Assembly (NCBI RefSeq): GCF_006345805.1
Contig: NW_021825446.1
Coordinates: 1-15,421, forward strand
Source of the DNA: Octopus sinensis
Lineage: Eukaryota
Reading direction: 5' to 3'
DNA: 15,421 bases
Shown: positions 9,819 through 14,529 of the stretch, one piece after another
Layout of the letters: each line of letters opens with the position of its first letter
Position numbering within the stretch: the first letter of the stretch is position 1
Notes under the pieces: model-generated
What the model saw: only the letters and a program-made list of their open reading frames with translations
Told to the model about the DNA's origin: nothing
Databases searched by the model: none
Translations under genes and position numbers: made by a program

Positions 9819-9826
9819 TATATATA

Positions 9827-9877
<51 letters not shown>
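9819..9877. repeat. (TA)n between palindrome A and the retrozyme-like unit
   Basis: Direct reading. Confidence 0.95.
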
Positions 9878-9879
<2 letters not shown>

Positions 9880-9880
<1 letters not shown>

Positions 9881-10321
9881 ATGATAAATATCAAAGTGAG
9901 TTATATACAGTAGCGGTAACACATCGTGACGTATATTTGCCATTCAATATGGCCACCCCTAGGGTAGATGCTACTGTAGTTTTTAGCCCAGGAGGACACA
10001 CTCCTCCAGCTGGCCATAGACACACTTTCTGTGTCCTGTCAGTATTTGCAAGGGAAGTCATCCTTCCCGCCTTCAACTTATGATACACACGGACTCGAGT
10101 TTCGAGGTATTGACCTCTCGTCAGCGTGTGGGACATTCATAGTTGTCGCCGAGAATTAGATTTCCTTCACAAATACTTATACTTTTTCCAGCGTCCACTG
10201 TCGCTGATATTGAAACAGTGAAATCAAACAATGATAAATATCAAAGTGAGTTATATACAGTAGCGGTAACACATCGTGACGTATATTTGCCATTTCAAAA
10301 TGGCTACCCCTAAGGGTGGAT
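9880..10321 (-). mobile_element. Retrozyme-like non-autonomous retroelement (350-nt unit plus ~90-bp terminal redundancy) carrying the hammerhead
   Basis: Direct repeats 9880-9969 and 10230-10321 are spaced exactly 350 nt apart and identical over the first ~64 nt. There is an internal hammerhead, no credible ORF, and (TA)n on both flanks. Confidence 0.75.
10086..10130 (-). ncRNA. Type I hammerhead ribozyme, canonical core intact
   Basis: Minus strand reads CACACG-CTGACGA-GAGGT(CAAT)ACCTC-GAA-AC(TCGA)GT-C/-CGTGTG. It has a 6-bp stem I, an exact CUGANGA box, a 5-bp stem II closed by G10.1-C11.1, a GAAA box, a short palindromic stem III (ACTCGAGT) and a GUC cleavage triplet. Predicted cut is between 10092 and 10091. 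Confidence 0.93.
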
Positions 10322-10340
10322 ATATATATATATTATATTT

Positions 10341-10541
10341 AGGGCATTATTACACATAAATGCCACACGAGGAGGGGACTTTTAAAGTCATACCTACCAA
10401 AAATAAACAATCGTACCGAATGCAATTCTCGAAGCGAGACATTTAAAAACAGAATTGAACTAAATTCTGTTTTAAATGTCTCGCTTCGAGAATTGCGTTC
10501 GGTACGATTTATTTATTTTAGGTAGTTATGACTTTAAAAGT
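10341..10541. mobile_element. Fold-back palindrome B, second copy of family A, inverted and truncated on the right
   Basis: Same arm sequence as 9566-9806. The loop region GAATTGAACTAAATTC resembles the reverse complement of the A loop region. The right arm stops at ...GACTTTAAAAGT. Confidence 0.85.
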
Positions 10542-10555
10542 TGAATATATATATA

Positions 10556-10780
10556 TTCAACAATAATATTAAGGAATGGCCTTAATAGGCATTCAACTCA
10601 CTAAATCGAGCAACTAAACTCAAACCGCTAAATAGTAGTAATTCGGAATCAAAGGAAAATTAAAAATGTTTTTTAATTTCCTTTGATTTCCGAATTACTA
10701 CTATTTAGCGGTTGAGTTTAGCTGCTCGATTTAGTGAGTTGAATGACCTAGTAAGGCCATTCCTTAATATTATTGTTGAA
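10556..10780. mobile_element. Fold-back palindrome C (different family), ~111-bp arms, 3-nt loop
   Basis: 10556-10666 pairs with 10670-10780 with a handful of mismatches and indels. The ends read TTCAACAATAATATT...AATATTATTGTTGAA, with TA-rich flanks. Confidence 0.85.
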
Positions 10781-10951
10781 CGTATATTATATAGTCTGTT
10801 GACTATTTTTTGTTTCTCACTAGACCGCTGGTGGCGAAAAAAATTTCTATTGAATTTTTTGCTACCCTTATATTGATTAATATATATACATATATACATA
10901 TATATATATATATTTATATGTGTATAAGGATGAAAAGGGACACACGAGTTG

Positions 10952-11447
10952 ATATATATGAAAAACAAGTCAAGATAGAAAATGCTAAAATAATTTTATA
11001 AATAACATTTCTGTACCGGTTTCGGTCATTTGAGACCTTTTCAACTGTAACTATTAGATAATTAAATCTAGAAAAAAAATTTTAAAAAAAGGTTTTCTAA
11101 ACCAATATTTGTATAGTGTCAAATACAAGTGGCATTTTCCTGTTTTGCCTTTCTCTGTGTCTGTTGTTACTCTTGTGGGTTCGAGGTCATACCAAGAATT
11201 CACATGGACCTTGAACCCACAGAATTAAACAAGAGAAGACAGAGACAGGCAGAAACAAGAAATGACTTGTATTTGAATAAGATTGTATTTTTTTTACTAT
11301 ACAAATATTCTTTTAAAAAACTTTTATTTTATTTTCCTAAATTTGATTATCTAATAGTTACAGTTGAAAATGTCTCAAATGACGAAACCGGGGTTGAATG
11401 TTATTTATAAAATTATTTTAGCATTTTATTCTTTGACTTGTTTTTTC

Positions 11448-11484: not shown

Positions 11485-12030
11485 ACAGCAGCCGTATTCC
11501 TACCGCTCTCTGTCACGCTGCTGAGACCCATATTGGAGACGGGATTCAGCCTCTTCTCATATCTCAAAGACATACATCATCTCGAAAGATTCAGAAGCTG
11601 GCTACCCGCATGGTTCTTGGTCTCAAGCATTTGTCTTAGAAGAAAGGTTGGAGACGCTCGACTTTATTCTCTAGAAAAAAACGACGACGCCGTGGTGATC
11701 TCATTTTTGCTCACAACATCATAAGCGGAAAGTGTAACCTCTCGAAAGCTGTTCTTCACTCCTGCTCCAGAGAGTCGGTTGCGGGGTCACTCCGAAAGCT
11801 CTATCTGCGACGATTTCATCTCAATCGAGGGAGAGGGGCTTTCTCCGTCCGGTTGCGGATCCGTGGAATAAGCTGCCGGACGAGATAGTGAAGATGCCGA
11901 CGACCGCTCGGTTCAAAGTCTCTCTGACCAGAAATGACCTGAACTCTTTGCATGAACACCCTCCCTGTACATAACTCCATGTCCACCTACATGGCCTGCT
12001 TTTTGCTTTTGAGTCAAAAATTAACTTAAC
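11485..12030 (+). mobile_element. 5'-truncated CR1-group LINE: ORF2 C-terminus plus 3' UTR, multiply frameshifted
   Basis: Frame-shifting translation gives VTLLRPILE...YLKDIHHLER(V)QKLATRMVLGLKHLS(Y)EERLETLD(L)YSLEKRRRRGDLI...RLRGHSE(K)LYLRRFHLNR...FSVR(V)ADPWNKLPDE...RFKVSL. These are hallmark CR1 post-RT motifs (RPxLEY, LERVQ, SYEERL, RGDLI, RGH, WNxLP). Confidence 0.88.
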
Positions 12031-13642: not shown

Positions 13643-14086
13643 TTGTATGTGTACGTGTATGTAAGTACGAATGTATGTATGTATGTATGTATGTATGTAT
13701 ATATGTATGTATGTATGTCTGTCTGTCTGTCTGTATGTATGTATGTCTGTATGTATGTCTGTATGTATGTCTGTATGTATGTATGTATGTATGTATGTAT
13801 GTATGTACGTATGTTTGTATGTATGTATGTACGTATGTAAGTATGTATATATGTATGTATGCACGTACGTATGTATATATGTATGTATGTATATATGTAT
13901 GCATGTATGTATGCATATATGTATGTATGAATGCATGTATGTATGTATATATGTATGTATGTATGTATGCATATATGTATGTATGTATGTATGTATGTAT
14001 ATATGTATGTATGCATGCATGTATGTATGTATGTATGTATGTATGCATATATGTATGTATGCATGCATGTATGTATGTATGTATGC

Positions 14087-14119
<33 letters not shown>

Positions 14120-14327
14120 TGTATATATGTATGTATATATGCATATATGTATGTATGCATGTATGTATGAATGCATGTATGTATGTATTCATGTATGTAA
14201 GCATGTATGTATGTATGTACGTATGTATGTATGTATGTATGTATATATGCATATATGTATGTATGTATGTATGCATGTATGTATGAATGTATGTATGTAT
14301 ATATGTATAGCATGTATGTATGTATGT
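13643..14327. repeat. ~685-bp (ATGT)n tract with ATGC/ATAT/CTGT variants
   Basis: Direct reading; source of the MYVC and HTYI ORFs. Confidence 0.95.
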
Positions 14328-14529
14328 ATTGAGCTTGAACCAACCGCTGCTCTTTCAGCCATTTCGGCCATATTTGATTAGTATGACAGCGTGCCGCATG
14401 ACGTCAGGTGATTTCGGGGCATTTTGCCCGCCAACCTCTGCCTTCATATCAACACATTAATTGGACTGTTGCTCAAGTAATGAGATACCAGCGACGATAA
14501 TGAAGCTCAGAACCCCAACGGCGTTGGCT

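What the first reader, a model, noticed from the sequence alone, without database searches (positions are those of the whole stretch)
10086..10130. Intact, canonical hammerhead ribozyme hidden between microsatellites
Seen: every catalytic-core position is present on the minus strand (CUGACGA, GAAA, GUC), with a perfect 6-bp stem I and a 5-bp stem II closed by G-C. Stem III is the palindrome ACUCGAGU. Established: type I hammerheads with very short palindromic stem III occur in Penelope-like elements and metazoan retrozymes, and can cleave as dimers by swapping stem III. Inference: this copy should still self-cleave after C at 10092. Joint conservation of all boxes and three stems is very unlikely by chance.
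Basis: partly seen in the sequence, partly recalled or inferred. Interest (0 to 1): 0.92.

Follow-up and report, generated by a model that had tools for sequence, protein, structure and literature searches.

The report
Hammerhead ribozyme in a retrozyme-like repeat
A complete, textbook self-cutting hammerhead RNA motif really is encoded here, but it sits in a short non-coding mobile repeat of a kind already well described in animal genomes, so it is a sound but ordinary find.

Summary
Minus strand 10130-10086 reads CACACG-CUGACGA-GAGGUCAAUACCUC-GAAA-CUCGAGU-C|CGUGUG. That is a full type I hammerhead with every core position, a 6-bp helix I, a 4-5-bp helix II closed by G10.1-C11.1, and the palindrome ACUCGAGU as helix III. 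The cut is predicted between 10092 and 10091.

Rfam Hammerhead_1 scores 32.2 bits (curated cut-off 34), E = 1e-4 for the whole window against all families. A strict descriptor found no match in 3000 shuffles.

The ribozyme lies inside a 440-nt non-coding element (9880-10319, minus strand). This is 1.26 copies of a 350-nt unit with 44% GC. Its predicted RNA is strongly self-paired (z = -5). Both ends abut (TA)n. There is no ORF, Pol III box or reverse transcriptase nearby.

This matches metazoan non-LTR retrozymes, the non-autonomous relatives of Penelope-like elements. With only one ribozyme at the locus, no unit-length RNA can be excised, so it is probably a dead-end copy.

Cleavage, expression and copy number could not be tested, and no relatives of the unit were found in any collection.

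Verdict: a new member of a known kind, of low to moderate interest, not 0.92.

The parts
10086..10130 (-). Complete type I hammerhead ribozyme motif (45 nt)
   Evidence: Rfam RF00163 aligns model 1-45 at 32.2 bits, E 3.9e-6 / 1e-4. It is the only strict-descriptor hit in the window, with 0 hits in 3000 shuffles.
10125..10130 (-). Helix I, 5' strand (CACACG)
   Evidence: Pairs 6 of 6 with 10091-10086.
10118..10124 (-). Catalytic core C3-A9 (CUGACGA)
   Evidence: Read directly. These columns are invariant in alignment A2.
10104..10117 (-). Helix II plus loop 2 (GAGG-UCAAUA-CCUC, or 5 bp with loop CAAU), closed by G10.1-C11.1
   Evidence: It is 14 nt long, the same as the Rfam consensus GUCC-CAAAUA-GGAC. 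Four of the six loop positions are identical.
10100..10103 (-). Core G12 A13 A14 and A15.1 (GAAA)
   Evidence: Read directly. Invariant in A2.
10093..10100 (-). Helix III: the 8-nt palindrome ACUCGAGU. As a monomer it gives 2 bp plus the tetraloop UCGA. Between two copies it gives 8 bp.
   Evidence: Every comparator hammerhead also has an 8-nt palindrome here, although the search pattern left the loop free.
10092..10092 (-). C17. The predicted scissile bond lies between 10092 and 10091.
   Evidence: Position follows from the Rfam alignment and the descriptor. Cleavage itself was not tested.
10086..10091 (-). Helix I, 3' strand (CGUGUG)
10060..10160 (-). Extension of helix I into a long, imperfect closing stem, with a 6-nt bulge AUGUCC on the 5' strand (candidate loop 1)
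   Evidence: Minimum-energy and constrained folds of the 101-nt context.
9880..10319 (-). The carrier element: 440 nt, equal to 1.26 copies of a 350-nt non-coding unit, with a single ribozyme
   Evidence: Direct repeat with 350-nt spacing. The unit is 43.7% GC and 63% paired. Its circular MFE is -113.5 kcal/mol against -85.3 +/- 5.6 for shuffles, z = -5.06.
10230..10319 (-). Direct-repeat copy A (the 5' end of the element on the ribozyme strand)
   Evidence: The last 65 nt are 100% identical to copy B. All 5 differences lie in the first 30 nt.
9880..9964 (-). Direct-repeat copy B (the 3' end of the element)
9807..9877 (.). (TA)n microsatellite abutting the 3' end of the element
   Evidence: TRF row, period 2, 36.5 copies. 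Sequence.
10320..10340 (.). Short (AT)n run abutting the 5' end of the element
   Evidence: Sequence and alignment of the repeat ends.

Best explanation
Minus strand 10130-10086 encodes a genuine, sequence-intact type I hammerhead ribozyme.

It is not free-standing. It is carried by a 440-nt non-coding element (9880-10319, ribozyme strand = minus) made of 1.26 head-to-tail copies of a 350-nt, 44% GC unit. The unit's RNA is predicted to fold into a highly paired structure in which helix I of the ribozyme continues into a long stem. The element lies within (TA)n.

I read it as one copy of a metazoan 'non-LTR retrozyme' type repeat. These are non-autonomous relatives of the pseudo-LTRs of Penelope-like elements (PLEs).

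The mechanism of the family is inferred from the literature, not shown here:
1. Multimeric transcripts are cut by the hammerhead after C17.
2. This releases unit-length RNA with 5'-OH and 2',3'-cyclic phosphate ends.
3. A host tRNA ligase (RtcB) circularises that RNA.
4. A PLE reverse transcriptase/GIY-YIG endonuclease copies circular or multimeric RNA into AT-rich or (TA)n targets, giving tandem or partial-tandem insertions.

Two features of this copy fit such a template. It is longer than one unit, and it runs uninterrupted through the cleavage/ligation site.

The locus holds only one ribozyme. A transcript of it could be cut once at 10092|10091, either as a monomer or in trans with RNA from other copies through the palindromic helix III. 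It cannot release a unit-length RNA. The locus is therefore most likely a dead-end 'monomer' offspring rather than a source copy.
For: Shown here:
- The complete core and three helices.
- The Rfam RF00163 full-length alignment: 32.2 bits, E 1e-4 for the window against 4227 families.
- 0 descriptor hits in 3000 shuffles.
- The ribozyme fits the type I consensus structure through compensatory changes relative to 9 other hammerhead families or consensus sequences. 95% of cells are paired, against 66% when shuffled and 22-39% when slid. All 6 helix I pairs and 3 of 4 helix II pairs show changes on both sides. The palindromic loop 3 covaries as AU/GC/UA.
- The dimer MFE is the double hammerhead with an 8-bp helix III: -33.9 against 2 x -14.5 kcal/mol.
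- The 350-nt period direct repeat, with 65 nt identical.
- The unit is 43.7% GC and 63% paired, with circular-fold z = -5.06.
- Both ends abut (TA)n.
- No Pfam domain in any non-low-complexity reading-frame segment of the window, no tRNA, and no Pol III A or B box.

From the literature:
- Canonical metazoan type I hammerheads have 6-bp, 4-bp and 1-2-bp helices with a palindromic loop 3. They sit in 150-450-bp low-GC repeats that are expressed as 170-400-nt self-paired circRNAs (PMC7229834, PMC4209133).
- PLEs insert as partial tandems with a bias for AT-rich or (TA)n targets (PMC8557442, PMC11167929).
- Retrozymes are phylogenetically nested with PLE pseudo-LTRs, and monomeric copies are read as non-mobile offspring (bioRxiv 10.64898/2026.07.22.740005).
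Against: - No second copy of the 350-nt unit was found anywhere. There is none elsewhere in the window. The family-specific pattern found none in the metagenome contigs. The protein-word route through a spurious ORF found none. No paper holds the sequence string. 'Repeat family' therefore rests on the 1.26-unit structure alone. The source genome is not in any collection available here.
- The defining retrozyme feature, tandem units each with a ribozyme, is not met at this locus.
- No PLE reverse transcriptase is in the window.
- The Rfam score is 1.8 bits under the gathering cut-off.
- Nearest-neighbour thermodynamics gives the monomeric catalytic fold a Boltzmann weight of only 2.5e-5. An inactive alternative fold at -14.5 beats the active fold at -8.7 kcal/mol. 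The Rfam consensus (1.4e-4) and a comparator family (4e-5) behave the same way, so this does not single the copy out.
- The (TA)n at the 3' end could be a tail made during retrotransposition rather than the target.
Confidence: 0.72

Rival explanations
1. The element is a fragment of an autonomous Penelope-like element, such as a solo or partial pseudo-LTR left after deletion of the ORF. It would then not be a member of a dedicated non-autonomous retrozyme family.
For: PLE pseudo-LTRs carry hammerheads with small palindromic helix III. PLEs insert as partial tandems into AT-rich or (TA)n sites (PMC4209133, PMC8557442, PMC11167929). The partial-tandem shape and the (TA)n flanks seen here fit equally well.
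Against: No RT or GIY-YIG remnant was found in any non-low-complexity frame segment of the 15.4-kb window. The ribozyme has the 'canonical' 6/4/2 architecture with a loop 2 close to CAAAUA, which the literature associates with retrozyme repeats. It does not have the 'minimal' PLE form with a long helix II, a bulged base and a short helix I (PMC4209133, PMC7229834). The 350-nt unit size and the strongly self-paired fold are retrozyme-like. The distinction is one of degree, because retrozymes are now viewed as PLE derivatives.
Confidence: 0.15
2. It is the stump of a satellite-DNA array with hammerheads, like newt satellite 2 or cave-cricket pDo500. The array would have arisen by unequal crossing-over rather than retrotransposition, and was later eroded to 1.26 units.
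For: The unit length of 350 nt and the head-to-tail repeat are what a satellite remnant would look like. The last 65 nt of the two repeat copies are identical.
Against: The element ends cleanly against (TA)n on both sides in a region full of other mobile elements. The literature now treats such hammerhead satellites as retrozymes (PMC7229834). The two models predict nearly the same sequence at a single locus.
Confidence: 0.07
3. It is a host-domesticated regulatory ribozyme, like the intronic or 3'-UTR hammerheads of amniotes, that cuts a specific host transcript.
For: The copy is single and sequence-intact.
Against: No gene, exon or protein domain is detectable around it. It sits inside a repeat unit bracketed by MITE-like palindromes and microsatellites. 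No conservation data are available.
Confidence: 0.04
4. It is a chance match to the hammerhead consensus in AT-rich repetitive DNA.
For: The Rfam score is just under the gathering threshold. The first-stage scan read many windows.
Against: There were 0 strict matches in 3000 shuffles of the window. Dividing the E-value by the 4227 families and scaling to 4e9 nt gives about 3e-3 for a 2-Gb genome (my extrapolation). Features that no search required are also present: the palindromic loop 3, a 14-nt helix II/loop 2 with AAUA, a bulged extension of helix I, and a location in a 350-nt structured repeat unit.
Confidence: 0.02

Closest known systems
Metazoan non-LTR retrozymes (Cervera & de la Pena 2020, PMC7229834): short tandem repeats with type I hammerheads, expressed as 170-400-nt circRNAs. 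Examples are newt satellite 2, axolotl Rtz_331/353, and the coral and mussel repeats.
   Same: A type I hammerhead with a 6-bp helix I, a 4-bp helix II with a 6-nt loop, and a 2-bp helix III with a palindromic tetraloop. The unit is 350 nt, GC is 44%, and it is non-coding with no LTR. The predicted RNA is highly self-paired, with the ribozyme's helix I continuing into the rod.
   Different: This locus has only 1.26 units and one ribozyme, not an array. Copy number, expression and circularity are unknown. There is no sequence similarity outside the ribozyme to any comparator retrieved.
Hammerheads in the pseudo-LTRs of Penelope-like elements (Cervera & de la Pena 2014, PMC4209133; Craig et al. 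2021, PMC8557442; Frangieh et al. 2024, PMC11167929)
   Same: The palindromic helix III implies a dimeric active form. The organisation is a partial tandem. The insertion context is AT-rich/(TA)n, and no target-site duplication can be discerned.
   Different: There is no RT/GIY-YIG ORF in the window. The ribozyme is of the canonical form, not the 'minimal' PLE form with a 7-8-bp helix II, an unpaired base before 10.1 and a 4-5-bp helix I.
Rfam Hammerhead_1 (RF00163), whose consensus is dominated by the Schistosoma SM-alpha and amphibian satellite ribozymes
   Same: The alignment is full-length and ungapped. All invariant positions are shared, helix lengths are the same, and loop 2 reads UCAAUA against CAAAUA.
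   Different: The score of 32.2 bits is under the 34-bit gathering score. Helix I and II sequences are entirely different, though compensatory. Unlike the SINE-like SM-alpha and the L002/L003 repeat, this unit has no Pol III A or B box.
Plant LTR retrozymes (PMC4918200)
   Same: Non-autonomous, ribozyme-bearing, and circRNA-forming in concept.
   Different: Those have type III hammerheads in true LTRs, with PBS/PPT, a ~700-nt unit, GC above 55% and 4-bp target-site duplications. None of these is seen here.

Membership tests
Hammerhead ribozyme, type I (Rfam RF00163) | Conserved core: C3 U4 G5 A6 N7 G8 A9, G12 A13 A14, the A15.1-U16.1 pair, and H17 | tested here: met
   CUGACGA at 10124-10118, GAAA at 10103-10100, U16.1 at 10093, C17 at 10092.
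Hammerhead ribozyme, type I (Rfam RF00163) | Three helices around the core with helix I open (type I topology), and a G10.1-C11.1 closing pair | tested here: met
   Helix I 6 bp, helix II 4-5 bp, helix III 2 bp plus a tetraloop. 95% of cells are paired across 10 sequences, with compensatory changes.
Hammerhead ribozyme, type I (Rfam RF00163) | Covariance-model score at or above the curated gathering score (34 bits) | tested here: not met
   32.2 bits. There is no hit in gathering mode. By E-value it is significant: 3.9e-6 and 1e-4. This is a near miss on a curator's threshold, not on a structural feature.
Hammerhead ribozyme, type I (Rfam RF00163) | Loop 1-loop 2 tertiary contact that gives fast cleavage at physiological Mg2+ | tested here: inconclusive
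   Loop 2, UCAAUA, shares 4 of 6 positions with the consensus CAAAUA. A 6-nt bulge, AUGUCC, follows the 6-bp helix I on the 5' strand. Contacts cannot be verified from sequence.
Hammerhead ribozyme, type I (Rfam RF00163) | Site-specific self-cleavage after position 17 | not testable with these tools
   Needs in vitro transcription or mapping of RNA ends.
Metazoan non-LTR retrozyme | Repeat unit of about 150-450 nt carrying a type I hammerhead, with low GC (<45-50%) and non-coding | tested here: met
   350-nt period, 43.7% GC, no protein domain.
Metazoan non-LTR retrozyme | Tandem arrangement, dimer to multimer, so that two ribozymes flank a unit | tested here: not met
   This locus has 1.26 units and one ribozyme. 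Monomeric derivatives of retrozyme families are described (bioRxiv 10.64898/2026.07.22.740005), but arrays of this family were not seen.
Metazoan non-LTR retrozyme | Unit RNA folds into a highly self-paired, compact structure | tested here: met
   Circular MFE -113.5 kcal/mol, 63% paired, z = -5.06 against 200 dinucleotide shuffles. This is a prediction only.
Metazoan non-LTR retrozyme | Many copies in the genome and expression as linear and circular unit-length RNA | not testable with these tools
   The source genome and transcriptome are not available. Scans for relatives were empty.
Penelope-like element (autonomous) | ORF with a telomerase-like RT and a GIY-YIG endonuclease between pseudo-LTRs | tested here: not met
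   No Pfam family at E <= 0.01 in the stop-free segments of >=50 aa submitted, the microsatellite-encoded ones being dropped.
Penelope-like element (autonomous) | Partial-tandem insertion and a bias for AT-rich/(TA)n targets | tested here: met
   1.26 units with both ends against (TA)n. This is consistent with PLE-mediated insertion, but a single locus does not prove it.
tRNA-derived SINE-like hammerhead repeats (SM-alpha type) | Internal Pol III A and B boxes, or a tRNA-like head | tested here: not met
   No B box within 2 mismatches and no A box within 1 mismatch on either strand. ARAGORN finds nothing.

The most novel reading that the evidence does not exclude
The 1.26-unit copy reads straight through the ribozyme's cut/ligation site and ends against (TA)n on both sides. 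It could be a sequence fossil of reverse transcription running more than once round a ligated 350-nt RNA circle, or along an uncleaved multimer. It would belong to a so far undescribed, possibly still active, retrozyme family in a microsatellite-rich animal genome. If the family proves young and abundant, its many 1.x-unit insertions would map, at nucleotide level, where a Penelope-type enzyme starts and stops on a circular template and how it picks (TA)n.
Probability: 0.3. Interest if true: 0.4.

Novelty: new member of a known kind. Interest (0 to 1): 0.2.

Why it matters
It adds one more, apparently uncatalogued, hammerhead-bearing repeat to a class known in animals since the newt satellite of 1987. 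That class is now understood as retrozymes or PLE derivatives.

Its practical value is modest:
- It is a clean query (a 350-nt unit plus ribozyme) for finding the family and its autonomous partner in the source genome.
- It is a compact natural ribozyme that could be tested for monomer versus dimer cleavage.
- It is a single-locus illustration of a partial-tandem insertion into (TA)n.

It does not open a new question.

Tried and rejected
1. Rfam at the gathering threshold over the whole window gave no hit. The hit appears only in E-value mode.

2. Other hammerheads in the window. The loose pattern gave a second match at 8930-8992 on the plus strand. It has no helices and is not found by the descriptor, so I treat it as chance.

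3. Other copies of the unit in the window: none.

4. Relatives elsewhere.
- The family-specific pattern in the metagenome contigs gave 0 hits.
- An exact look-up and a homology search with the 81-aa spurious ORF spanning the ribozyme gave 0 hits.
- Look-ups of two long window ORFs to trace the source contig gave 0 hits.
- Sequence strings searched in the literature gave 0 hits.

5. The general hammerhead pattern in viral contigs gave one hit, inside a GC-rich stretch with no helix I. I rejected it as chance.

6. A PLE RT/EN or any other protein domain near the element: none.

7. Pol III boxes or a tRNA-like head: none.

8. Taxon of origin. A frameshifted LINE-tail piece used as a protein query gave nothing. 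The very high microsatellite density, 20% of the window, reminded me of decapod crustaceans. That is memory only and unverified.

9. The idea that the flanking MITE-like palindromes and the ribozyme element form one 773-nt composite tandem unit. I rejected it because the two periods differ (773 against 350) and homology stops at the palindrome.

10. Using MFE alone to argue the monomer is inactive. I rejected it because the Rfam consensus and a comparator family show the same tiny Boltzmann weight for the catalytic fold.

Full report
**1. The observation.**

Read on the minus strand, 10130-10086 is CACACG CUGACGA GAGGUCAAUACCUC GAAA CUCGAGU C CGUGUG. In hammerhead numbering:
- Helix I: 10130-10125 pairs with 10091-10086, six Watson-Crick pairs.
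- Core C3-A9: 10124-10118.
- Helix II and loop 2: 10117-10104, closed by G10.1-C11.1. It can be read as 5 bp with loop CAAU, or as 4 bp with the 6-nt loop UCAAUA.
- G12-A14 and A15.1: 10103-10100.
- Helix III: the palindrome ACUCGAGU at 10100-10093.
- C17: 10092.

**2. More than chance?**

- Rfam at its curated thresholds lists nothing in the window.
- In E-value mode, Hammerhead_1 (RF00163) aligns end to end, ungapped, at exactly these coordinates. The score is 32.2 bits against a gathering score of 34. E = 3.9e-6 on 601 nt and 1e-4 on the whole window against all 4227 families.
- I wrote a strict type I descriptor: helix I >=5 bp, CUGANGA, helix II >=4 bp closed by G-C, GAAA, A15.1-U16.1 plus at least one further pair, and H17. 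It finds this site alone. It found nothing in 3000 dinucleotide-preserving shuffles of the window on both strands. A much looser version gave 33 hits in the 3000 shuffles.
- Dividing the E-value by the number of families and scaling to a 2-Gb genome gives about 3e-3. This is my extrapolation.

The motif is real.

**3. What carries it.**

The window has no convincing gene. About 20% of it is tandem repeat, nearly all of period <=6. It is eukaryotic non-coding DNA.

The ribozyme lies between two copies of an 85-90-nt direct repeat spaced 350 nt apart, at 9880-9964 and 10230-10319. The last 65 nt of the two copies are identical. All five differences lie in the first 30 nt.

The element is therefore minus strand 10319->9880, which is 440 nt or 1.26 head-to-tail copies of a 350-nt unit. 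It contains one ribozyme. Both ends abut (TA)n, at 9807-9877 and 10320-10340.

I took the unit from cut site to cut site (10091-9880 joined to 10229-10092). Its properties are:
- 43.7% GC.
- A predicted circular fold of -113.5 kcal/mol with 63% of bases paired. Dinucleotide shuffles give -85.3 +/- 5.6, so z = -5.06.
- Helix I of the ribozyme continues into a long imperfect stem after a 6-nt bulge (AUGUCC) on its 5' strand.
- No Pol III A or B box, no tRNA-like head, no other Rfam family, and no reverse transcriptase or endonuclease remnant in the window.

**4. Folding of the ribozyme.**

- As a 45-mer, or in 101 nt of context, the catalytic fold (-8.7 kcal/mol) loses to an alternative hairpin (-14.5). 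Its Boltzmann weight is about 2.5e-5.
- The Rfam consensus (1.4e-4) and a comparator family (4e-5) behave the same way. This reflects the known weakness of a 2-bp helix III in nearest-neighbour models rather than a defect of this copy.
- For two molecules, the minimum-energy structure is exactly the double hammerhead with an 8-bp intermolecular helix III: -33.9 against 2 x -14.5.
- The literature reports two relevant behaviours. Such ribozymes are more active as dimers (axolotl). Invertebrate versions with a 2-bp helix III and a tetraloop also cleave efficiently as monomers, with a coral kobs of about 0.8 per min (PMC7229834).

- A family-specific pattern found nothing in the metagenome contigs.
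- A general canonical pattern, which left helix I, the interior of helix II and loop 3 free, retrieved 39 metagenome loci. It also retrieved two tiny scaffolds in bacterial assemblies.
- The metagenome contigs are animal DNA, since they carry Kelch and rhodopsin-type GPCR ORFs.
- Every comparator has a 6-bp helix I. All but two decayed copies have an 8-nt palindrome at helix III: ACAGCUGU, ACACGUGU or ACGCGCGU.
- On an alignment of the window's ribozyme with nine other families or consensus sequences, 95% of cells pair in the type I structure. The figure is 66% when shuffled and 22-39% when the partners are slid. All six helix I pairs and three of four helix II pairs show changes on both sides. 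The palindromic loop positions covary as AU/GC/UA, and the window's sequence contributes the only U-A.
- Caveat: the pairs fixed by the search pattern (G10.1-C11.1, A15.1-U16.1, C15.2-G16.2) are invariant by construction.
- None of these loci resembles the 350-nt unit outside the ribozyme.

**6. Interpretation.**

The anatomy matches the metazoan non-LTR retrozymes. These are 150-450-bp, low-GC, non-coding repeats with canonical type I hammerheads, expressed as self-paired circular RNAs of 170-400 nt (PMC7229834). They are now regarded as non-autonomous derivatives of the pseudo-LTRs of Penelope-like elements (bioRxiv 10.64898/2026.07.22.740005). PLEs insert as partial tandems and prefer AT-rich or (TA)n targets, where target-site duplications cannot be discerned (PMC8557442, PMC11167929).

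The copy here is longer than one unit and runs uninterrupted through the cleavage site. Its template must therefore have been a circle or an uncleaved multimer. That step is inference.

With one ribozyme the locus cannot release a unit-length RNA. It is best seen as a dead-end 'monomer' offspring, a category the 2026 preprint describes.

What is shown: the motif, its significance, the repeat structure, the flanks, and the predicted folds. What is inferred: catalysis, transcription, circularisation, the mobilising enzyme, and the existence of further copies.

**7. Rivals.**

- A remnant of an autonomous PLE (confidence 0.15). There is no ORF remnant, and the ribozyme is of the canonical form rather than the minimal form.
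- An eroded satellite array (0.07).
- A domesticated host ribozyme (0.04). There is no gene context.
- Chance (0.02).

**8. Limits.**

- I could not find the source genome or any second copy. Family membership therefore rests on architecture.
- The defining tandem arrangement is not met at this locus.
- The Rfam gathering score is narrowly missed.
- The taxon is unknown.

**9. Verdict.**

However, this is a new member of a well-known kind, not a surprise. Interest is 0.2.

Noticed in passing
window 9560-9806 and 10345-10541: Two copies of a near-perfect palindromic MITE-like element lie in the same orientation, 773 nt apart, bracketing the ribozyme element and its (TA)n flanks. The arms at 9579-9676 and 9697-9794 are 97% complementary. 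The second copy lacks its right end. The only Rfam matches are sub-threshold miRNA-precursor hits, for example MIR4374 at 71 bits against a gathering score of 105.
   Followed up: partly
window 10567-10790: A different palindromic element of about 220 nt abuts the truncated MITE copy. It is probably a nested insertion.
   Followed up: no
window 11016-11086 and 11322-11392: An inverted repeat of 71 nt, 83% complementary, with arms 235 nt apart. It may be another small foldback element.
   Followed up: no
window ~11640-11970, + strand: Three overlapping reading-frame pieces (RRRRGDLI......RPVADPWNKLPDEIVKMPTTARFKVSL) look like a frameshifted C-terminal tail of a CR1/L2-type LINE reverse transcriptase. 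I recognised this from memory only. There was no Pfam hit and no protein-database hit.
   Followed up: partly
whole window, e.g. 4241-4839 (TCA)n, 13656-14329 (TGTA)n, 2527-2748 (AGAT)n: Microsatellite density is extreme. 20% of the 15.4 kb is tandem repeat, spread over 42 TRF rows. This hints at a very SSR-rich animal genome. The taxon was not determined.
   Followed up: partly
window 10295-10319 versus 9945-9964: All five differences between the two copies of the direct repeat fall in its first 30 nt, and the following 65 nt are identical. Two of the differences lengthen a small hairpin (GCCAUUU/AAAUGGC in place of GCCAU/AUGGC). This could reflect the 5' end of cDNA synthesis, or selection on structure.
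   Followed up: no
L002 1-367 and L003 1-476: Two very short scaffolds hold the same circularly permuted repeat of about 340 nt. One is in the Vibrio viridaestus LJC006 assembly and the other in the Marinifilum breve JC075 assembly. The repeat has a canonical type I hammerhead and tRNA-type A/B-box-like motifs (TAGCTGAGTGG, GGTTCGAGTC). This is most likely animal retrozyme or SINE-like contamination in bacterial assemblies.
   Followed up: partly
L004-L042, e.g. L005 70-102(-)/514-546(+), L024, L027: One metagenome (Ga0126343) holds a dispersed animal repeat with a canonical hammerhead. It often occurs as inverted pairs 230-450 nt apart and has an internal inverted duplication. This is the arrangement described for PLE insertions. 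The contigs also carry Kelch and GPCR genes.
   Followed up: partly
window 8930-8992, + strand: A second match to the loose CUGANGA...GAAA...GUC pattern. It has no helices and is a chance match.
   Followed up: yes
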